Shown here: positions 8,315-47,990 of the stretch, in pieces | Layout: the number at the start of each line of letters is the position of its first letter | Position numbering within the stretch: the stretch's first letter is position 1 | Origin: Lepidodermella squamata | Taxonomy: Eukaryota; Animalia; Gastrotricha | Assembly: GCA_047495785.1 (NCBI GenBank) | Contig: JBLDXI010000014.1 | Location: 62,001-126,000 of the forward strand | DNA: 64,000 bases | Direction of reading: 5' to 3' | Position numbers and translations under genes: made by a program | Notes under the pieces: model-generated | The model's database searches: none | What the model was told of the DNA's origin: nothing | Seen by the model: the letters and a program-made list of their open reading frames with translations, nothing else

Positions 8315-9225
8315 GGTAGATGGTGACATGCGCCCAGAATTTTGCGCCCAGCGTGTTTGCGCCCACAAAAATGCGCCCTGACTTTTGCGCCCTGACTACT
8401 GCGCCCATAAATTTACGCCTTGACATTTGCGCCCCGACTTTTGCGCCCATACAGTATGCGCCCTGACATTTGCGCCCCGACCTTTGCGCCCAGTGTTCTT
8501 TCCGCTTTGCCAATGGCAACTGTTTCATGATGCTCATATCTTCGAGATGTCAGTTAATTTCATGTTACCGAGGAGGAGTACAATTTTGAAAGGTAAAAGT
8601 TTGATAACTTTTTCCACTAGATACTAGATGGCCTACCTGCGGTTGACTTCCTAAAATTCTGGAAAAATATCTAAAAAATATCTTGGCTCCTGTAGAATAA
8701 GGGTATTGATTTTGTTTTCCCGGATTCGATTCCATTATTGACTGCAGATTTTTTGGAATCGAACCCTCGATAACCCTAAAAACACCCCTCTGGATCTCTT
8801 CACCTGGGTGGTTTGTTATATTAAATATCTGAAAAGTCTAATACAAAAGTCATAAAATGACTGAGTTTTCTATTAATGAGCACGCTTGAAGGTGCATTGA
8901 CTTTTCGCCAACACAGAACTATAGAAATAAGAAAATAATTTTCAGGTATATCTTCTTTAATCACAGATCAGGTATTTGGGGAACAGCCAGCTCATATTAG
9001 GATCTATATGATTAGGCGAAGAAAGTTTTCTTCCAACACACAAATCGGGGCGCAAGTGTCAGGGCGCTATTGTCAGGGCGTAAAAATACGGGGCGCAAAA
9101 GTCGGGGCGCAAATGTCAAGGCGCTTGAATCTGGGCGCAAATGTCGGGGCGCAAAAGTCAGGGCGCATTTTTGTGGGCGCAAACACGCTGGGCGCAAAAA
9201 ACTGGGCGCATGTAACTACAATTCC
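8315..9225. mobile_element. Foldback-type non-autonomous element (911 bp) whose inverted arms are tandem 14-15-nt TGCGCCC-core repeats
   Basis: About 12 TGCGCCC-core units at ~8329-8490 are mirrored as GGGCGCA units at ~9045-9211. Ends are GG...CC. Flanks TTCCCGCC (8307-8314) and TTTCCGCC (9226-9233) form a 7/8 TSD. AT-rich spacer. Confidence 0.85.
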
Positions 9226-9867: not shown

Positions 9868-11713
9868 TCAAGAATTGCCGCCAGAGGGAGGCGGCGCGTT
9901 TCCGCGTCGCGGATCGAAGCGAACCGGTCGATTTGACGCGGCGCCACCTGCCGATGAAGACGACGAGACCGCTGCGGCGAGAGACCGCGAGAATACCATC
10001 GTCCGACCGACTGAATGTCCTGAAGCGGCCGGACGACTCGACGCAGCCGGCGGAGCGTCAGAGTCTTTGAGACGCCGGTCAGTCTCGTCCTCGCGTGGCT
10101 TCCGGTCGGCAGGCTCACGGTCGAAGTCTCGTTGCCTCGACGACCCGCTACCACCCCGGGCTCCTGAACTGCCAGCAGATGACGGTTTGTTGCCGCCCGA
10201 GCTTTGAGATGTCGAATCCTGACGTCGAGACTGGCCACCCCCAGCCCCGCCACCGCCACCGCCCCGATTAGCACCTCCTCGCTGTTGAGGCTTCGGCCTG
10301 CTCGACCTGTCTTCGTCGTCATCGGCAACTTCCACGAAACGCAAATTTTGCCCGGGCGCAACTGGCTCACTTGCTTTCGGCTGATCGTGCTGACGAGGCG
10401 TTTTCGGGGCCGCAGATGCTGCTGATCGGTCTGAACGTTGATTGCCAGCAGGCCGGCGGTTGGTATCATCCCGTTCATCTGTCGTCGCCGGTCGAGCAGA
10501 GCCAGCCGGGCGTGGTTTCCGTTGATTTTCCGACCTGTTTTGCTGCCTATTGTAACCACCTTCATCTCTTATCGGCTGCTCGATAGAAGTCTGTTCCTTG
10601 GCTGATGTCGATCCCGCTGCCGGTTTCGACGCGATTTTTACGCTTCCGACCGCTGGAGCCGCGGCAGCTTGCTCCTTCGCTTTCCTGTTCGCTCCTCCCC
10701 GATCGCGTTTCCTATCTCGCCGTTTCTTCTTCTGCTCAGGCGCGGCTTCCGACTGATGCTGCTTGGCTTGCTTTGCCAGAATGCGCCTCGCTTCCATCTT
10801 CCCGCGGCGACGTTGTTCAAGAAACTCCACCAGTGGCGACTTCTTCTTCGAGAAATCATCTTCCGATCGGAGCCTTGCTTCAATTTCACGCAGCATTTCA
10901 TCAGGGTTCAACTGAGCCACCTGCTCGCTATTGCCGGGTATGATTGTCGAACGCGAATTAGACAACTTGTCGCAGAATAATTTGAAATCATCGTCGTCAA
11001 TGAGGGTTCCCTGAAACACAAACAAAACAAATGCTCGATAAGAAATGTGGCTGAAATTGACGACCAACAAACATCCAATTCAATTTTCAGAGCTCTAAGT
11101 GTCTCTATTCAAGATCTTCATGACATCCGACCTTTTAAGAGAATAAGCAAGGATTTTTCTAACCTTCAAAGTGTTCAGCTTCTTAGGTTTTCTTGCAAGT
11201 GAAGGATCAGGCAGCATGCCGGATTTTTCGACACCATCTGGTTCAGCGGCTAAAAACTGGTATGAACCATCTGCAGCTCGATCCGGAATGCGCTGGTTAG
11301 GGGCGAACTCGACCAAAGCTGGGTACATGTGGCCTTTGGCATCGGCGAATTCGTAGCCGTCCCACCGCGCGCATACACCATACACGTCATCAAGCTTTCG
11401 AAGGCCGACATAGGCCCTACAGCACGCAGCCTCGGCTCCAGCACTAAATACACACACCAAGTTGAACTTATACTGGATAGTATTTCATTTCAGCAAACCT
11501 GTAATCAGCTTTGCAATAATGAAAATAACGATGCTCGGGCAACGGCGAGATGACGGATAGAAACTCATCGGCCGTTAAGGTGGGTGGTAGGTGTCTGAAG
11601 ACAATTTTATTTGTCATCATCGACGCGCCACACCCGCTGCGGGCATTCGCTTGAGCTTCACCATCCCTAGAATCTTTATCGCCATCGACCTTTCTGTCAC
11701 TTCCTCGAACCAT
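9868..11713 (-). CDS. UPF3: Regulator of nonsense transcripts 3 (UPF3/SMG-4), 3 coding exons
   Basis: KIVFRHLPPTLT...PLPEHRYF, RAYV...WDGYEFADAKGHMYPALVEFAPNQRIP and GTLIDDDDFKLF match the UPF3 RRM-like domain and adjacent helix. A long charged low-complexity tail follows. Confidence 0.93.
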
Positions 11714-12074
11714 TACAGGCAGAATTAAAAATAACTAAACAATCAATGATGCACGAGTTAGAAAAGGCTGAATTTTATTCAAAAAGGCTAGGCTTCAAAG
11801 AAGAGACGAGCACGCTGAAATTGCCATTTTATGATACATAAAAATGATTCATCTCATCGCTGAACGACTTAACACCAAATAGAAAAATTTCAATTAATAT
11901 CAATAATCACTGATTTTGCTTATAATAATAGCAATAGTAATGATAATCAAAATAAATATAAATAGCCCTTGTAAAAACCTATAGGTATGCGTTGTAGCAC
12001 CGGCCATGAGGCGCCTGATTGCAATCCCAAAGCGAGAACGTGACAACAAATAGTTATTTATAGCTTAATATTGC

Positions 12075-14371
12075 CTAATTAGTTGTGGCGAGGCAATCTG
12101 ACGACACTTCGGAGTTTTCGATTTTCAGTCCGTCGACACTGCTAACGCAGCCGCCCTCGATAGCATCGACAGCTGCTTCGATAGTGATAGGCGATGAACA
12201 CGAATCCAGCCTGCCGTCAGTAGAATTCTGTCTCTCCATCCACAAGGATAGAATAGGGGAGTTTGAATTCTCGCTCTTGGCACTGTTCGCACGCGGCTGG
12301 TCAGAGCCAGACACTGATCGACCGAGGTCCTGCAAAAAAAAACAAATCAGTGCATTCAGACAAATCTCATCAAAGCAAACGATCGATAGCGAAGCATGAA
12401 ATTAACCCTAACCCTAATTTTCAAGCTCAAAGTCGCTTATGTAGCATAGGTTACTAAAGCCAAAAGCAAGTATGTACACTTAGTCGCGATGGGATGCTGT
12501 TGTTTTCTGACAACTTTGAAAATAGCGGGGACTCGGATGGAACCGACAGGGCCACACTGGACGCCGAGGTAGAGCTTGCATGCCGGCCAAAAACTTGCAT
12601 GCGCAAACTTACGCCGTGATTCGGGTGCGAATTTCTCGGCAGAACGCCGGCAGACGTCGGCGGGCGAGGCACACGGCTCGTATTGAAAAACAAATCGTGG
12701 ATGCACCAGCTGATATTTTCAAGCAATTGCGCACCGGAGGACGACTGCTTCCGTTGAGTCAAAGTGTAGCGCATTTGCGAGGTCACTCTTGCCAGAAGAA
12801 ATATTGCATAGCGAAACTTTTGATAGCTCGACCGATCCTGGAAGAAATTGATTATTGAGGTAAGCTTTTTTTCTGGACTAGGAAACTAACCGTAAAATAA
12901 AGAGGGAAAGTCCGATCAGAATCGTTGGCTAACTGAGTGAGAATATGGTCGAATATTGCCGAATGCGAGCCACGAAATACGATTTTGTAACGAGGAGGAA
13001 TGCTGAACAGCCAATGAATGAAGAGTAGATAGTGCGCTGCGTATCCAATCGCAACCGAAAGACTCGAATAAGACACTGAAATATTATTTGGCACATTGTT
13101 TGCATTGGCAGGTGCCGATATTGAAACTGCCCCAGTAGGGTTGGCGCCAGATTTCGGCAGCAAAATCGCATCGGGAAACGGAACGCTGGCGATCGAACAA
13201 AGACCATCCTGCCGCCGGATCGGGTAAATTTCGTACAAATCATTGATCATCTGCCCTCGCCGCCATAGCACCAATTTCCGTTTGCGATTCAATGCATCGG
13301 CCAGAGAGGCGTAGTTGCCCTCCATATTTTCACGCCAAGCGACCAAATCCTCGAATTCTTCGTGAACTTTATCCGACTCCTCTAACATCACGGCGGTTTT
13401 CTGCTGAAGGTGAGCCAGTTTCGAGCGTTTCAAATTGCATGACTGCTCTAGTTTCTGACACCGCCGTGTCATCTGCTCAACTTCATTTCGCAGCTTCTCG
13501 CGAGCTTGCTCGGCCGAAACGATCGCAATGCGATCCGTCAGTTTGTTCTCGATTTCTACTTGTCGATCAACTGCGAGTTCGAAAGACTGGCGCAATGCTT
13601 TTGAAACCATGCAAATACGGACGATTGCTGATAAGGTGTAAGACTTCTTGGGATCGCGACAGCTCAGCAAGTTTGATAATTGCATCGCTGAAGATTCTAC
13701 TTTCCCACAAAATTAAGGCAACAATAATAAGGCATCATTAGACATTACCTTCGACTTGTTTCAAGGTTTCGTTCTTCGATTCACTCCCAGAATCGCTCGG
13801 ACTTTTTTCGATGGGTTTTCGATATGATGGTTTAGAAGTCGACGGCAAGATGAAGGCAAAACTGCCATGGACTAGGTTTACCACCAATGTGTTGGGAGCA
13901 TATTTAACCCCATATGTAACATAAGCCGCTGCATTAAATGGTATGAGATCGACCTGAGCAAAAGTTTGATTGTAATGAAATCTGAAACTCGATCAAAATG
14001 AATACCATATCAATGTTGTATTCGACTAGCAAAGCCGTAGTTTGGGATATTTGGTCAAATTTCCACACCTTGACACACATTTGTCGGCTTGACAATATTT
14101 GTTGCTCAGCATGTGCGGATTGATTCTGTGCTGAAGAAATCGCCTTGATGTTGAAGCCGCCCCAGCAAAGGTCTGCGCTGACTGCGAGGCGCTCGCTGGC
14201 GTATAACTGTGGTTGACTTGAGTTTTGGTGTAACGTAAAATGGATGAGTACATGGCCGCTCAATTGCGTGTTGACGAGCGAAAAATTACGAATTTCTAGC
14301 GAAAACAGGTGACGAATACGCCGCTGCAGCGGCAACCGTACAATTGTAGTCGCTGCTCTATCCGAATTCAT
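12075..14371 (-). CDS. UVRAG: UV radiation resistance-associated protein (Vps38), multi-exon
   Basis: N-terminal LPLQRRIRHL motif and C2-like region, a coiled coil, then RRGQMINDLYEIYPI...VAIGYAAH...RYKIVFRGSHSAI...FPLY, typical of the UVRAG/Vps38 BARA-like region. Confidence 0.9.
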
Positions 14372-14671
14372 GTTATTCAATAAATGCTAACAAGAGACAA
14401 ATAACCAATATAAATGATTCATTTAAATATAAACATCAGCGGAAGAAGGTAATTAGAAAATTGAGAAATAGAAATCTGCAAAACTCTAAAAAAACTATAA
14501 GGCACTGGTGTATTATCGCAGCAATAACTCGATTAAAAGGTAAGGATTTTAGGAAAAGAGATAAAATGCAGTCGATAAGACTGATTGCTGAAAGAGCTCT
14601 AGAAGCACAGGAAGCACGATTCGTTGATATAATATCAGTAAAGGCGTTAGCAAGTTGAGTTATCAGTAATT

Positions 14672-15994
14672 CTAACAACATTTCGACTTCTTTCCGCGCT
14701 TGCCCTTCGAGGATGACGGAACAATAACACTCATGACGCTTGATCTAGATGATTCGGACGATGGTAAACGCCGTATTACAGCCAACGTCAAATCAATGAA
14801 AGCTTTTTCGACATTTTCACCAGTCTTAAATACAATAAATTCTATCATCTGATGTTTGCGGAATGACTACTTACTCTGGCGCTAACTTCATTGAAAGGCA
14901 TGCCATATTGGGTCGCAAGCTGGAACGCAGCATTTTTGAAAACTTGCCGCTTATCCGGTATGTCAGACTTATTTCCGATCAGCTGGTTGAATTTTTATAT
15001 GGAAATTTATCAATAAGGATATGATTAATTTAGATTAACAACCATCATTTCCACGCCTTCGCCAGCATTCATCTGGACTTGACGAATCCAATTCGTGACG
15101 TTATCGAAAGAACTTCGCCGAGTAATATCGTAGACAAGAAAAATCGCTTGAACATTGCGATAGTAGGAAACGGTGATTGTGTTGAACCTTTCTTGCCCGG
15201 CGGTATCCCTGACGGAAATGAACAAACAATCTTATTGAGCTAAGTTACAATCGAAATGATTGCTTGATGATAGATAAGATAGCATGGCGATTAGCAACCC
15301 TCGAACTTTTCAAAAATCTTTTTCTGTAAAATGTTTCGCATTTATATATTTCTTGATTGTATCGATTGTTGCAGTTATAGCTCGCATTTTTAAGCTTCTA
15401 TTTATACCCATGTTCATTACGAAATTTCTTCTTCAGCTGCCCAACAGCGCAACCAGAAGGCATTGGAGAGAGAATTATTTCAACCGAAACCGAAACTATT
15501 ACCGATGTGGAGCAACGGGACCTACGCAAGAGCAAATTTCAATAATACGCTTCTTTTGAATTGAAATAAAGAATTGAACTTCCGTTTTAATATTATCTCT
15601 AACTTTTGGTCTTTTCTTGCACTCAAATATGTTTTTGCACCAAATAAAGAATTTTGCAATTTGTTCGTATCATTTGGCGTCAGTTAACGATAACATCCAA
15701 ATTCCACACAAAAATCAGATGGGGAAATATGTTTTGCTTCAAATTAGTTTACCATATTTGAAGGCTGACTTTTTTGCCACCTATATCCATCTTTTTAATT
15801 TTGAAGTCGACACCTGAGAGAAGAAAAAAAATACTCTGATATTCTAGCAGCGGGGAAGATTTCTCACCTATAGTTGCCACAAGATTAGGATCGAACGACC
15901 CATCACAAAATTGATTCAACAGGCAAGTTTTACCAACTCCAGAGTCGCCAATCACTAATATCTTAACCAAATGGTCATATGGTTTCTTTGTCAT
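14672..15994 (-). CDS. Rab GTPase of the Rab8/10/13 group (divergent)
   Basis: [23 protein letters not shown] (G1), TIGVDFKIK, LQIW|DTAGQERF (G3), GNKSD (G4), EVSAR (G5), C-terminal KSKCC prenylation signal. Stop at 14672-14674. Confidence 0.9.
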
Positions 15995-16270
15995 AGTAAA
16001 AGAACTAAAAGAAGGGAGGAGGCCGCCTAGAAAGACAACGTGAATGAAGGCAAATGGACTTTTAAGATCGGCGTTCGGCGGAATCCCTAAAACACAATTT
16101 TGGGAGCTCAATATCGGCGAGTTCAACAGTTCCCGTCCGAGCTTTATTTTGTCACGCATGGCGGCTAGCAAGACGACGTATTTACTGCAAAACGCAACAG
16201 AGGACAGTTGACAAAACGAAAGAACGGTCGAGGGTCGACGAGGCGGCTTCTGTTTCGAACCCCTTTTTGC

Positions 16271-17107
16271 CTGCCCTGCCCTCATACCTAGGGAACCTCA
16301 GGTTCCCTAGGAAGCAAATTATATCATTGGGCAGAATATGGCCCTATTGTCAGAGGTAATTTGCCAATCCTCAGACATCAGTTTATATGGCCAAATTAAA
16401 TGCCTTGATTAGGCGCTTAAAGAAAATCAAGATGTTTTTGACTATGCTATTGTCGGAACTGAGCAATCTTTCAGGATCATGACTAACTAAGGACGCACAT
16501 TCGTATGATAGATGATATGCTAGCAGTCTAAGAGGTGTATCATCGCCACAATACATGCACTTAACATTGGTGATTCTAAAAATAATGTGCTCTAGACGAC
16601 GGAAAGTAGTGTTAGTGATAATTTGAAAAGCAGTCGCACGTAAATCTGGCGGGTAGTTTTCGAAAATATTGCTAATACCGAAGTATCCTTTTTTAGCTAA
16701 TAGATATGTATTATCGTATTTAAGGTGAAACTTCACTGAAAGTTCTGTGGTGTAAACGTCTTTGACCAGCTTAAAAATCTGGTTCATGAAGGTTGGATCT
16801 CGTAATAGCCAAAAGTCAGGTGTTATATTGTAAGAAACAAGAAAATCTCGGGCTGCATGAATAGGGTTAAGAACACCCAATTTAGGACGAGAGTGGTAGT
16901 AGAAAGAAAAAGCATCCTGTACTAAAGGATTATCGCACCTGGTCAGCTCACACACAAATTTAACAGCATTAAGTTTCGCTTTTAGACTAGTAGGTATTAA
17001 TCCCATAGTGAAACCGGTCGACAGATTGGAAGCACAAAACGGGATATCACGTGCTCTCTTGAAATACTTGTAGCTCACGCTATCCAGCTTGGAGACCCTA
17101 GCTTGGA
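16271..17107 (-). mobile_element. 5'-truncated non-LTR retrotransposon (C-terminal ORF region with CCHC zinc motif) with 14-bp TSD
   Basis: GAACCCCTTTTTGC occurs at 16257-16270 and 17108-17121. ORF 16383-17078 contains CMYCGDD...YHLSYEC near its end. The 3' end has an 11-bp hairpin (16287-16311) and a short GGGCA-repeat tail. Confidence 0.85.
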
Positions 17108-17400: not shown

Positions 17401-18540
17401 ATGAAGAAAACGTTGAGAATCAAAATCATTACCATGGGTAATGCTGAAGTTGGTAAAGTAAGTCCTGAAGAGTTGCGAAACAACTGTGACTTGATGATTT
17501 GCCTGTTCCATGTTACAGAGTTGCATGGTGAAACGGTACTGCGAAAAAAGATTTGTCAACAAGTATCAACAAACAATCGGTATCGATTATGGTGTAACCA
17601 GGTATTTTATTTGTACTATTGATTTTATATACCTTTGAGTGTTAATTTCATTTAGAGCTCGCGTGGCCGATCGGGATGTTAAAGTCAATATCTTCGACTT
17701 CGGTGGGCATAGCTGTTTTCTTGAGGTTACTGAAGAAAAAATGAAAGAATCACAACTTCAACCTAGCTGATTATTTTCTATAGGTTCGTAATGAATTCTA
17801 TAAGGATGCTCAAGGCAAGCCACTTTTTGATGTTGTCACTCACTTTTACTCATCGTTACTAGGCTGTCTGTTGGTTTATGACGTGTCCGACCAGAGCTCT
17901 TTCAGAGCCCTTGACTCATGGCTCATTGAGCTCAAGCGAGAATTTGGAGATTCCGAGGATCTATCAAGATTAATCTGCATAGTATGCGCCAACAAGGTAG
18001 ATTGGTGGAATGCTGTTTTATTATATACTCATATAAATAATATTTGATTATTATTCAGACGGACAGAAAGCGTGTTGTTAGCGAAACTGATGGAAGGCTT
18101 TGGGCTGATCAGAGGGGTTTCCGCTACTTTGAAACATCTGCCTTGTCTGGAACAGGTATCGACGATGTCTTTCAAACACTGTTCGATGGAGTTATCTCAG
18201 TGATCGAGGGTGTTCCTGTGAATCTGAATGACAATGGTAGCCACAAGTTGCCTTCGTTTTCGAAAGATCAGTTAGATGCTATCGATCGTGTAAGAGCTGC
18301 TAATGATAACTACGAACGACTTCAGATCAAAAAAGGTGAATTTACTTCTTATTATATAAGCCTGAGTACATGAACTTGTTTGCGGATAAAGGTGCATCTC
18401 GCGATGACATTAACCGAGCTTATCGACGACTTGCAGTATTGCTACATCCTGATAAAACTGGCGGCGCCCCGGGGTCTGAAGAGGCGTTCAAAATAATTGT
18501 AGCGGCTCGAGCTGATTTATTACGTACAGCAATAAACTGA
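17401..18540 (+). CDS. DNAJC27: DnaJ homolog subfamily C member 27 (RBJ, Rab-like GTPase fused to a J domain)
   Basis: RIKIITMGNAEVGK|SCMVKRYCEKRFV..TIGIDYGVT, NIFDFGGH, EVRNEFYKDAQG, YFETSA, and C-terminal J domain INRAYRRLAVLLHPDK...GSEEAFK. Confidence 0.96.
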
Positions 18541-44724: not shown

Positions 44725-45707
44725 TTACTTGTTACCGGAAAATTCTCCGTCCTGCCTGCTTATTCTTACGTTGCGCTGACCTTGCAATTCTCTGCAATAT
44801 CGGTCGATAGAATCCTCGAAATTGGCAAATCGATCATTCCTACTCCTAGTCTTCCGTTCCACTTGATATCTCCCTCATGATTTCGCAAGGTGTTTTACCA
44901 ACCAAGTCGCCGTTCTCCAATCAATCGATCAATCTGCGATTTTGCGTCCTCCGTGAACAACGAAATTTACTATACGGTGCTGTATAAATATGCCCTTTAA
45001 TGTTGCTACTGGTTTAATTGTTTAATTGTGCCTTTCTTACATCTGAAAGTGGCCAATTTTGTTGTGCAAATGTAGATAGAAGGAAAGAGAGAGACATTTA
45101 TTTGCGCTAAATTTTGCTATTTTGATTTACCTAATTTTCTCCAGTCTTCAGCTAACTCGGTAATTTTTTGACAATTGATGATAAATCCGCGAATATTAAT
45201 GCTAGAGATATACTTGTTGATGTTCAATTATAATCAGCCTTCGTCCTTTGTGAAAATTATTCGGTTTTTTCTACTTACCAACTTTCTATTAATCTCTTTC
45301 GGCTGTTGGAAATCGTTGCTTTTCTACTTTACACGTCGTAATTGTTCACATATATTTATGCAATCAAATTATTCTGATATGCAAACGTAGGAATACGCGA
45401 ACGGAACTGCTGGTGAAAAGTAATGTTTTGGGCAAGCATATTTCAGCTGCTGATATAACCGTCTTATCATCACTTTAACTTCTTCGTTGTACTGCTCTTC
45501 CAAAAAAGAACACAACTCCTGACTGCGATTTTCTTGATTCCTAAATTGAACCAATTTTGAAATTCTTGATACGCGCGCTTGCAGCTAAAACTATAAATGC
45601 ATCGTGAACCTAAATAAGATTCAAATTTGAGAGAAAAATAAAGGAAAATTTGACGATTACAAAAACCAGTCTTGCTTGATAATTTTAGGCGATTATATTT
45701 GCCTTGA

Positions 45708-47990
45708 ATGAGTGATAACGCGAACTCAACGCTGAATAGCAGGCGGTCGTTTCACTTCGTCGACAGTACCGGGCAAAGCCGAGTTGCAGATTTGACCCCG
45801 GCACATGTGATCAGCAATGCCTCGGGACACCGAGCCATTTTCATCACTCACCAACCGTCCAGTTCTAGGAACGTAGTCACTATATATAAGCAACTGCAGC
45901 CATTAACTGAGGCATCAGACCCTTCGGAAGTTGAAGTTAGACAGGATCCGGCGAAAATTAAAGATGGGAAGCCGAAATTGGGACCATCAAACTACCCTTA
46001 CGCTTGTTCAGCCTGCTCAAACCGCTTCCGGAATGCCTTAGCTCTGATGAAGCACTCGAATAAAGCGCACTATGAAAGCAATCGGAAAGCGGTAGAAGCT
46101 CCGAAAGTGAAACCATTTGTTCTGAAAATTAACCCGTTGAGATCTCTCCGCTCTGCTCCATCAGGTCGAATTCTGTTTTCTCTGCTGGAGACGAATCCTC
46201 GACCTCCTGTTCAACCCGCCGTGAAAGATGCAGATATTAATGATAATACTAAGGGTACCTACAAATGCCGGTTTTGTACTGGTGACAAAGTAGTCAAGTT
46301 CAATTACCGGTCCCATTTGATCCAGCACTATAAATTTCACCGAAGGTTAGCTATGGCTGATCGTAATAAAAAACTGGTTTGCGCTGTTTGCCAGCGGTTA
46401 TTTGTCAACCGATCTTCGCTTTTCGTCCATATGCGAAGTCAACACCCTCTGCCGAGAGGACCTGGCGGGCTAGGAGTAGTCGAAATTAACACGGCCTACC
46501 CGATGGAATGCTTGCTATGTTTTAAACGATTTCGAGATGAAGATGAGCATATGAATCATTGGAAGTCAGCTCACCAGGAGAAGCGCGTTTATCGCTGCAT
46601 TGAGGTTTGCAATTTATATCTACCAGGTGCCGAGCCAAAATATTGTTTTGCAGTGTTCACCCCCTCGTGATTTTCGAAGTTCAGCGGAACTTGATTTACA
46701 CCAAAGATCTCATACTAAAACTAAAAATTACGGTAGGTATAATTGACAATTTTGGAAGCTTAAGTTGAAGAACCCAAATTAAATTAGAGTGCCTGAATTG
46801 TAAGCGTAAGATGTCTTCAAAATCGAATCTAAACCGGCACATGATTCTGATTCACGGTACTGAAGAACAAAAATCTCGTTTGGTCGAAAAGGCGACATCT
46901 TCTGCCATTGCGGACGTCGAGGAGGAGCTTACTTCGGATCGAAATTCAATTACATGCGTAATCTGCTGCCGGAAATTTGCTAATTTGAACGAGCTCATCG
47001 AACATCGCCGGCTGCGACACAGCGATGGAAACGACCGGCCGTGGCCTTATGCTTGCCACAAATGCTCTCAGCGCTTTCAATACCAAAGCCAGCTGGCGTT
47101 CCACCTGAAAACTGCAAAAAATCACAAAAATGTTATCAGCAACGAATTTTCTGTCCCAAAAATAGTTTCTCAGCCGAAGCCTCCACGACCTCTATCTCCA
47201 CCTGAAATGTTTTCAATTGACCTGAGTGCAAACACTCAGGAAGAAATTGAAGCGGCCGAAGCTCTGAGGCGAAGTAGATTGATTGATTTACCTAACGAAA
47301 CGGAACCAATTTCAACCCCTCCTGCTCCGTCGCCAGGTCTAACACAAAACCTGCTGGACATGGGCGATGAGTCTTGGATGATTCCTCTGCTGCCAGTTGG
47401 ACGTTTCCTTGAAGGTGCGATTATTTACATTTTGAAGATTAGCTTATCATTTTTGGGTTAAGACTCGGCATCTGGAATGGAGGGCGTTTTTAACGCTGCT
47501 CGAGCTGACCTGGCTACCCCAACTGCTCTAGATCTCGATGTTTTACCGCCGAGCTCGATTCACGGCGAACTTGAGGCAGAAGCGATCTCAAATCCATGTC
47601 CTGTAGCTCAAGCGGACGGTTCGTTTTCGTGCAATGTTTGCTCCAAGGTATTCAGATTTATTTACCTTGATTCCTACTATTATATTTTAATTTCAGAATT
47701 TCGGCAGGCTAGGCGATGCGAAGCGACATATTCAGGTTATACACGTTGAAGAGCGGCCTTTTGCCTGTGATGTGTGTAAAAAGACGTTCAAATGGCGGCA
47801 TTCTTACGTTGATCATCGGAGAATTCATTCAGGCGAACGGCCGTATGTATGTGAAATTTGCGACGCTGCATTTACCGCTTCTGGTAACCTGATGCGACAT
47901 AAGAAAAACACGCATGGCATTGGGCATCATCAATCCTCCGCTGTAAGGGCGGCAATCAAGCCACAGAACCTAACCACCGGTGAATTATGA
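45708..47990 (+). CDS. C2H2 zinc-finger protein (~11 fingers, multi-exon)
   Basis: ORFs 45708-46670, 46811-47461, 47477-47749 and 47772-47990 join via short introns. Many C2H2 motifs and an HSGERPY linker. Confidence 0.88.

What the first reader, a model, noticed from the sequence alone, without database searches (positions are those of the whole stretch)
11711..12077. UVRAG-UPF3 junction has the anatomy of a trans-spliced operon
Seen on the minus strand: the UVRAG stop (12075), a ~300-nt 3' UTR, AATAAA (11779-11774), a CTAAC branch-point match (~11761-11757), a TTTAG acceptor (AG at 11736-11735), and the UPF3 ATG at 11713. Only ~60 nt separate the upstream poly(A) signal from the downstream start codon, leaving almost no room for a promoter or first exon. 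Established: nematodes, tunicates and flatworms resolve polycistronic pre-mRNAs by 3' cleavage coupled to spliced-leader trans-splicing at such unpaired acceptors. Inference: this animal has operons and SL trans-splicing, possibly undescribed for its lineage, here linking an autophagy gene with an NMD gene.
Basis: partly seen in the sequence, partly recalled or inferred. Interest (0 to 1): 0.78.

Follow-up and report, generated by a model that had tools for sequence, protein, structure and literature searches.

The report
Possible trans-spliced operon junction, unproven
Three unrelated genes of a tiny freshwater animal (very probably the gastrotrich Lepidodermella squamata) sit nose to tail, and the junction in question looks like a worm-style operon junction, but the RNA data I could reach do not cover it, so the reading is plausible and not shown.

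Summary
RNA contigs and homology confirm a same-strand run: Rab-like GTPase > UVRAG > UPF3.

Taken alone, the junction motifs are not beyond chance. The TTTAG site scores p about 0.39 against a model of this locus's own cis-intron ends.

Support comes from context:
- Acceptor-like sites precede all five start codons checked, three here and two in a relative (combined p about 0.002).
- RNA contigs of Rab and UVRAG leave only 34 uncovered bases between them, and that gap holds UVRAG's acceptor.
- RNA shows at least 157 nt of UVRAG 3' UTR, leaving at most 183 nt before the UPF3 acceptor.
- The one relative found keeps UVRAG > UPF3 adjacent (175-nt spacer, TTTTAG 17 nt before the ATG) while the neighbouring genes were rearranged.

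Not shown: no RNA contig lies on 11445-11917. So there is no leader, no UPF3 5' end, no UVRAG poly(A) site near 11774 and no dicistronic RNA. I could not verify an SL RNA gene.

Verdict: a trans-spliced operon is the best reading (about 0.5). The mechanism is known, and I found no paper on it for Gastrotricha. The scan has already noted the same signature on other pieces of this genome.

The parts
14672..15994 (-). Rab-like small GTPase gene, upstream gene of the run (ATG 15994-15992, stop TAG 14674-14672, four introns)
   Evidence: Pfam Ras/Roc on two exons. The RNA contig skips four GT..AG introns and runs on to 14411, 261 nt past the stop.
16005..16010 (-). TTTTAG acceptor-like site 10 nt before the Rab ATG
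   Evidence: p 0.24 alone. No RNA contig covers 15939-16005.
14377..14410 (-). 34-nt stretch between the last Rab RNA letter (14411) and the first UVRAG RNA letter (14376); it holds the TTAG acceptor (AG 14388-14387), 15 nt before the UVRAG ATG
   Evidence: Contig pieces, joints and depth bins of run X1; sequence; acceptor score p 0.04; AATGAA at 14423.
12075..14371 (-). UVRAG/Vps38-like gene (ATG 14371-14369, stop TAG 12077-12075, four introns)
   Evidence: A 1944-nt RNA contig covers 14266-12018 with four introns skipped. Best solved relative is human UVRAG. Pfam ATG14/VPS38 matches fall below the cut-off. 50-67% identical to the relative's gene.
11918..12074 (-). Part of the UVRAG 3' UTR that RNA contigs show
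   Evidence: The contig ends at 12018. A second contig of the same depth (41.9 against 40.5) runs to about 11918, worked out from the depth bins.
11774..11779 (-). AATAAA, the only canonical poly(A) hexamer in the spacer; candidate UVRAG poly(A) signal, with a TATA-like element for UPF3 as the rival reading
   Evidence: Use not shown: no RNA contig lies on 11445-11917.
11757..11761 (-). CTAAC, branch-point-like, 23 nt before the AG
   Evidence: Cis introns of these genes carry similar YTNAY motifs about 20 nt before their AG.
11735..11739 (-). TTTAG acceptor-like site 21 nt before the UPF3 ATG; proposed trans-splice site
   Evidence: Weak alone (p 0.39). The relative has TTTTAG 17 nt before its UPF3 ATG (p 0.006).
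9868..11713 (-). UPF3 gene (ATG 11713-11711; introns 11498-11444 and 11163-11011; stop TGA 9870-9868; AATAAA at 9846-9841)
   Evidence: Pfam Smg4_UPF3; the RNA contig skips intron 2; alignment to the relative.

Best explanation
Rab-like GTPase, UVRAG and UPF3 are transcribed in the same direction as one tightly packed unit. The UVRAG message is cleaved and polyadenylated in the spacer. The AATAAA at 11779-11774 would put that cut about 20-25 nt before the next acceptor. The UPF3 message gets its 5' end when a short leader from a separate RNA is spliced onto the unpaired acceptor at AG 11736-11735, leaving a 21-nt 5' UTR. This would be a spliced-leader-resolved operon junction with a very short gap between the two genes. 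Shown: gene order, strand, gene models, the extent of mature RNA on both sides of the Rab>UVRAG junction, at least 157 nt of UVRAG 3' UTR, and the adjacency in a relative. Inferred: use of the poly(A) site, trans-splicing at 11735, and co-transcription.
For: Same-strand run with introns confirmed by RNA contigs. The verified UVRAG RNA reaches 11918, so at most 183 nt remain before the acceptor. That is under the 250-bp separation used to call operons in a chaetognath (PMC12460157). At the next junction upstream, Rab RNA reaches 14411 and UVRAG RNA starts by 14376, so only 34 nt are uncovered, and these hold a good acceptor. Acceptor-like sites lie 10-26 nt before all five start codons checked (product of p 8.9e-7; by Fisher's method, my own arithmetic, about 0.002). 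The branch-like CTAAC and T-rich TAG resemble this locus's cis-intron ends. Four upstream ATGs at 11857-11827 would burden any UPF3 transcript that starts further up and is not processed. In the only relative found, UVRAG>UPF3 stays adjacent with a 175-nt spacer, while a Rab gene was gained or lost on one side and filamin moved on the other.
Against: No leader, no UPF3 5' end and no bridging RNA were seen: run X1 has no contig on 11445-11917, though a hole in contigs proves nothing. The UPF3 acceptor is not better than chance by itself. The relative's spacer has no AATAAA. I could not verify an SL RNA gene. The last 112 nt before the ATG hold no ATG, so a short promoter with a start site there would also work.
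Confidence: 0.48

Rival explanations
1. UPF3 is trans-spliced at 11735 but has its own small promoter inside the UVRAG 3' UTR or spacer. The stretch upstream of the acceptor would then be an outron, and there would be no operon.
For: Acceptor-like sites also precede first genes: in the relative, UVRAG sits after a 634-nt divergent spacer and still has TTGCTAG 26 nt before its ATG. So an acceptor alone does not mark a downstream operon gene. RNA coverage of UVRAG stops at 11918, leaving up to 183 nt. A TATA-like CTATTTATAT lies near 11966-11957.
Against: 183 nt or less is very little for a terminator plus a promoter. The adjacency is kept in the relative with only 175 nt in all. The neighbouring junction leaves 34 nt.
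Confidence: 0.22
2. This is an ordinary gene with its own promoter and a genome-templated 5' end. AATAAA would act as a TATA-like box about 30 nt before a start site near 11748, and TTTAG and CTAAC would be chance matches in AT-rich DNA.
For: The acceptor scores at chance level (p 0.39). The motifs each occur about once per kb per strand. The 112 nt before the ATG are free of ATG.
Against: Acceptor-like sites precede all five starts checked, including a strong one at the same place in the relative. The relative has no AATAAA or TATA at the matching spot. UVRAG would then need another, non-canonical poly(A) signal.
Confidence: 0.17
3. UPF3 has a cis-spliced non-coding first exon inside the UVRAG 3' UTR. 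One candidate is a donor GTTAAG near 11874, which would give a 140-nt intron ending at 11735.
For: GT donors of the local type exist in the spacer. The RNA contig that ends at 11918 could in principle belong to such an exon.
Against: That contig has the UVRAG depth (41.9 against 40.5) and overlaps the UVRAG contig by one word length. No joint to 11734 was listed. Introns here are mostly 50-60 nt.
Confidence: 0.08

Closest known systems
Caenorhabditis elegans SL2-type operons (my own knowledge)
   Same: Same-strand unrelated genes; the upstream poly(A) signal is followed closely by an unpaired 3' splice site just before the downstream start codon; the downstream 5' UTR is short.
   Different: The nematode gap between poly(A) site and trans-splice site is about 100 nt with a U-rich element, and an operon-specific SL2 is used. 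Here the predicted gap is about 20-25 nt if AATAAA is used. No leader was seen, and nothing is known of leader classes.
Tunicate operons (Ciona, Oikopleura) and nematode SL1-type operons (my own knowledge)
   Same: Very short or absent spacer between the upstream 3' end and the downstream trans-splice site, as predicted here and as the 34-nt uncovered gap at Rab>UVRAG suggests.
   Different: In those systems the RNA ends were mapped. Here they are inferred from contigs, which cannot show ends.
Chaetognath trans-splicing and operons (Paraspadella gotoi, PMC12460157)
   Same: Operons are called there as genes under 250 bp apart with at least one leader-bearing gene, and leader genes often sit in ribosomal DNA. 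This pair meets the distance criterion (183 nt or less). This genome's rDNA spacer holds two small snRNA-like modules.
   Different: No leader-bearing read was seen for any of the three genes here, and the rDNA modules are not verified as leader genes.
Flatworm spliced-leader trans-splicing and polycistrons, e.g. Schistosoma (my own knowledge)
   Same: The phylum usually placed closest to gastrotrichs (PMC6468455 abstract) uses SL trans-splicing and has some polycistronic units.
   Different: No sequence link to flatworm leaders was tested or found. Whether the origin is shared or independent is open.

Membership tests
Spliced-leader-resolved operon | Two or more same-strand genes with a very short distance between the upstream mRNA 3' end and the downstream mRNA 5' end | tested here: met
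   Stop to ATG is 361 nt. RNA contigs leave at most 183 nt before the UPF3 acceptor and 34 nt at Rab>UVRAG. The criterion of under 250 bp is taken from PMC12460157.
Spliced-leader-resolved operon | The downstream mRNA carries a non-genomic common leader joined at an unpaired acceptor | tested here: inconclusive
   Read laying on X1 (RNA contigs) gave no contig on 11445-11917 and no loose end at 11734, 14386 or 16004. The 5' ends of all three mRNAs are missing from the contigs.
Spliced-leader-resolved operon | A polycistronic precursor spans the junction | tested here: inconclusive
   No X1 contig bridges 11918-11734 or 14411-14376. Contigs drop rare forms, so this is no evidence of absence.
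Spliced-leader-resolved operon | 3' end formation of the upstream gene lies just before the trans-splice site | tested here: inconclusive
   AATAAA lies 39 nt before the AG, but RNA coverage stops at 11918. At Rab>UVRAG the RNA contig ends 24 nt before the AG, and a contig end is not a mapped poly(A) site.
Spliced-leader-resolved operon | An SL RNA gene in the genome (leader, GT donor, Sm site) | tested here: inconclusive
   The 8.46-kb rDNA unit has two spacer modules sharing a 30-nt block. One is followed by an Sm-like AAAAATTTTG, a hairpin and a T-run. The fold is no better than shuffles (z 0.27). The leader boundary was not established. Rfam gave no SL family in the window or in the rDNA unit.
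Spliced-leader-resolved operon | Gene adjacency kept in relatives | tested here: met
   One relative (ENA metagenome contigs L002-L004) has UVRAG>UPF3 on the same strand with a 175-nt spacer, while the flanking genes are rearranged. It is a single relative only.
UPF3 / Smg4 (PF03467) | N-terminal Smg4_UPF3 RRM-like domain | tested here: met
   Exon 1 scores 36.9 bits and exon 2 scores 41 bits, against a cut-off of 24. The relative's orthologue matches UPF3A/B structures at E 4e-22.
UVRAG / Vps38 | Coiled-coil and BARA-type C-terminal region similar to UVRAG | tested here: met
   The best and only solved-structure match is human UVRAG, E 1.2e-6. Pfam ATG14 at 25.4 bits and VPS38 at 17.5 bits fall below their cut-offs, so the name rests on a modest match.

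The most novel reading that the evidence does not exclude
Gastrotrichs, a phylum with no published record of it that I could find, use spliced-leader trans-splicing to resolve operons. The gap between the upstream poly(A) site and the downstream trans-splice site would be only a few tens of bases, and such units (here UVRAG>UPF3, perhaps with the Rab gene in front) would be kept between species while the surrounding genes rearrange.
Probability: 0.5. Interest if true: 0.6.

Novelty: new member of a known kind. Interest (0 to 1): 0.42.

Why it matters
Spliced-leader trans-splicing and operons are scattered patchily across animals: nematodes, flatworms, tunicates, rotifers, chaetognaths and others. 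Whether they arose many times is still debated. Gastrotrichs are usually placed next to flatworms, so a gastrotrich case would add a data point at an informative place in the tree. It would also matter for annotating the published Lepidodermella genome, whose paper does not mention operons or trans-splicing. This one junction adds little by itself. Pairing an autophagy gene with an NMD gene has no evident functional meaning, and the evidence here is indirect.

Tried and rejected
1. Loose ends of RNA contigs near the Rab 5' flank (16052, 16103, 16128) share a 50-nt foreign stretch that I first took for a leader. It is absent from the genome at up to 2 mismatches. It does not join at an AG. The window stretch it joins is single-copy. 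I rejected it as a leader.
2. Reaching transcripts of this animal through the protein collections failed. Searches with the last UPF3 exon, an RPS21 exon and a UVRAG exon returned only one relative each and no protein of this animal. Small ribosomal protein genes have introns, so an exact look-up by reference was not possible.
3. Two scans of JGI metagenome contigs for UPF3 relatives found nothing.
4. Searches for leader-bearing retrocopies, using two guesses at the leader's end taken from the rDNA spacer modules, gave no hits.
5. The promoter-like 25-mer of those modules occurs only in rDNA among the places listed.
6. Aligning the spacer with the relative's spacer gave no meaningful conservation.
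7. Rfam found no RNA family in the window at gathering thresholds. No Sm-site-plus-hairpin gene was seen in the window.
8. A second composite motif before the zinc-finger gene at 45708 is not a clear operon junction, because the upstream gene's last visible exon ends about 900 nt earlier.
9. The step of joining the exons was left out.
10. Read laying was given 6,000 letters.
Full report
**What is in the sequence.** The stop-to-ATG spacer is 361 nt. AATAAA is its only canonical poly(A) hexamer, and its end lies 39 nt before the AG and 60 nt before the ATG.

**Gene run.** The junction is part of a longer same-strand run:
- a Rab-like GTPase (ATG 15994, stop 14674-14672);
- UVRAG (ATG 14371, stop 12077-12075);
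- UPF3 (ATG 11713, stop 9870-9868, with its own AATAAA at 9846-9841).

**Gene identities.** UPF3 exons 1 and 2 pass the Pfam Smg4_UPF3 cut-off. They are 75% and 69% identical to a relative's UPF3, whose best solved relatives are human UPF3A/B. The large UVRAG exon has human UVRAG as its only solved relative (E 1.2e-6), and its Pfam ATG14/VPS38 matches fall below their cut-offs.

**Which organism.**
- The window's assembly has 121,234,032 bases in 151 contigs.
- The published Lepidodermella squamata assembly is 122 Mbp in 157 contigs (PMC11660948).
- Earlier notes of this scan independently name that species.
- I take the identification as very probable but did not test it by sequence.

**RNA evidence.** One search for runs and one lay of reads were allowed. 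Two runs hold the stretch. X1 behaves as RNA: its contigs skip nine GT..AG introns of the three genes. X2 is DNA and is collinear with the window. X1 shows the following:
1. A 1944-nt UVRAG contig covers 14266 to 12018 with four introns removed. A second contig of the same depth (41.9 against 40.5) carries the 3' UTR on to about 11918, worked out from the depth bins. So at least 157 nt of 3' UTR are real.
2. A Rab contig runs to 14411, 261 nt past the Rab stop. A piece of a UVRAG contig reaches 14376. Only 14377-14410 are uncovered, and these 34 nt contain the acceptor TTAG (AG 14388-14387), 15 nt before the UVRAG ATG.
3. Nothing from X1 lies on 11445-11917. UPF3 exon 1, the proposed acceptor, the AATAAA and 140 nt of presumed 3' UTR are all uncovered.

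The 5' ends of all three mRNAs are missing from the contigs. Rab lacks 15939-16005 and UVRAG lacks 14377-14386. This looks like a general 5' drop-out, and the tool warns that a hole proves nothing. There is therefore no loose end at 11734, no joint into 11734 and no bridging contig.

**Is the anatomy more than chance?** For this junction alone, no.
- A weight matrix from the ten cis-intron 3' ends of these genes gives the UPF3 TTTAG site a score of -0.7, and 39% of random 30-nt windows do as well.
- The composite pattern (AATAAA, branch-like YTRAY, TTnAG, ATG) occurs six times in the window against 1.8 in shuffles. Only two of the six end at a long ORF.

Taken together the picture is better. 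The best acceptor within 30 nt of the ATG has p 0.39 for UPF3, 0.04 for UVRAG and 0.24 for Rab here. In the relative it is 0.006 for UPF3 and 0.04 for UVRAG. The product is 8.9e-7, and by Fisher's method (my own arithmetic) that is about 0.002. The CTAAC resembles the YTNAY motifs about 20 nt before the AG of the local cis introns.

**Comparative evidence.** Only one relative could be found, on ENA metagenome contigs.
- Its proteins are 34-87% identical to those of the window.
- Its gene order is RJL-type GTPase (-), UVRAG (+), UPF3 (+), filamin (-).
- The UVRAG stop and the UPF3 ATG are 175 nt apart, and a strong TTTTAG lies 17 nt before the ATG.
- In the window, a Rab gene and a LINE fragment lie between RJL and UVRAG, and filamin lies on the other side. 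UVRAG>UPF3 is therefore the one adjacency of that block left intact.
- The relative's spacer has no AATAAA and does not align with ours.
- Acceptor-like sites also precede UVRAG in the relative, where it is a first gene behind a 634-nt divergent spacer. An acceptor therefore speaks for trans-splicing or a 5' UTR intron, not for operon membership as such.

**Leader gene.**
- Rfam finds no SL family in the window or in the rDNA unit.
- The 8.46-kb rDNA unit carries 5S and, in the spacer, two modules that share a 30-nt block. The second is followed by an Sm-like AAAAATTTTG, a short hairpin and a T-run.
- Earlier notes of the scan call these modules leader genes.
- I could not fix a leader boundary. 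The fold is no better than shuffles. Two guessed leader ends never occur joined to anything else in the genome.
- I count this feature as inconclusive.

**Explanation and rivals.** The best reading, at about 0.48, is a spliced-leader-resolved operon junction. UVRAG would be cleaved in the spacer and UPF3 trans-spliced at AG 11736-11735.
- In favour: at most 183 nt lie between verified UVRAG RNA and the acceptor. That is under the 250-bp criterion used for chaetognath operons (PMC12460157).
- In favour: the 34-nt gap at the neighbouring junction, the four upstream ATGs at 11857-11827 that an unprocessed long 5' UTR would carry, and the conserved adjacency.
- Against: the missing RNA evidence, and the end of UVRAG coverage at 11918, which may mean a poly(A) site well upstream of 11774.

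The rivals are:
- trans-splicing from an own promoter in the spacer (0.22);
- an ordinary promoter with AATAAA as a TATA-like box and chance motifs (0.17);
- a cis-spliced 5' exon inside the UVRAG 3' UTR (0.08).

**Novelty.** I found no paper that links gastrotrichs with spliced leaders or trans-splicing. The genome paper contains none of the words operon, spliced or trans-splicing. A recent review-like passage lists nematodes, tunicates, rotifers, chaetognaths and ctenophores. The mechanism itself is well known. The scan has already noted the same signature on many other pieces of this genome, and some follow-ups report having seen a leader in RNA data. Those are unchecked notes and I did not use them as evidence. 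This junction is one more plausible but unproven instance.

Noticed in passing
window 16052-16128 (minus strand, 5' flank of the Rab gene): Low-depth X1 contigs match this single-copy stretch, but both sides run into the same 50-nt sequence, which is absent from the assembly. One variant has 11 extra letters. This could be a strain difference, a small tandem or circular artefact, or an unassembled element. It does not join at an AG.
   Followed up: partly
window 16383-17078 (minus) and 16200-16399: A 231-aa ORF with a cysteine/histidine knuckle looks to me like the C-terminal end of a LINE ORF2, although Pfam finds nothing. The DNA run X2 piles up to depth 319 with many loose ends at 16263-16333. 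So a repeat sits about 270 nt upstream of the Rab start, between Rab and the divergent RJL-type GTPase gene (17651-18537, plus strand).
   Followed up: no
window 11444: The X1 contig of UPF3 exon 2 ends exactly at the exon's 5' boundary. In a word-graph assembly this is what a branch would give, meaning more than one sequence upstream of exon 2. It could equally be plain loss of coverage.
   Followed up: no
window 8328-8493 and 9043-9210: Two arrays of a 14-nt unit (GGGCGCAAAAGTCA and its complement) in opposite orientation lie just downstream of UPF3. This is where the gene order differs from the relative's.
   Followed up: no
L011 (G000:C5:5600-14300), 204-2004: The rDNA unit of 8.46 kb contains 5S on the opposite strand. 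It also has two spacer modules that share the block AAACCACATGCACRTGGTCATTGGCGAC, and the second ends in an Sm-like site, a hairpin and a T-run. The block has about 1000 copies in the genome, and all copies listed lie in rDNA.
   Followed up: partly
window 45637-45710 (plus strand): The same composite (AATAAA, branch-like motif, TTTTAG 19 nt before the ATG) ends at the start of a 320-aa C2H2 zinc-finger ORF (45708-46670). The upstream zinc-finger gene's last visible exon ends about 900 nt earlier.
   Followed up: partly
L002 10001-11389 against window 11713-11011: The relative's UPF3 is one uninterrupted 462-codon frame, whereas the window's gene has two introns in the same N-terminal domain. 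Introns were gained or lost between the two animals.
   Followed up: no
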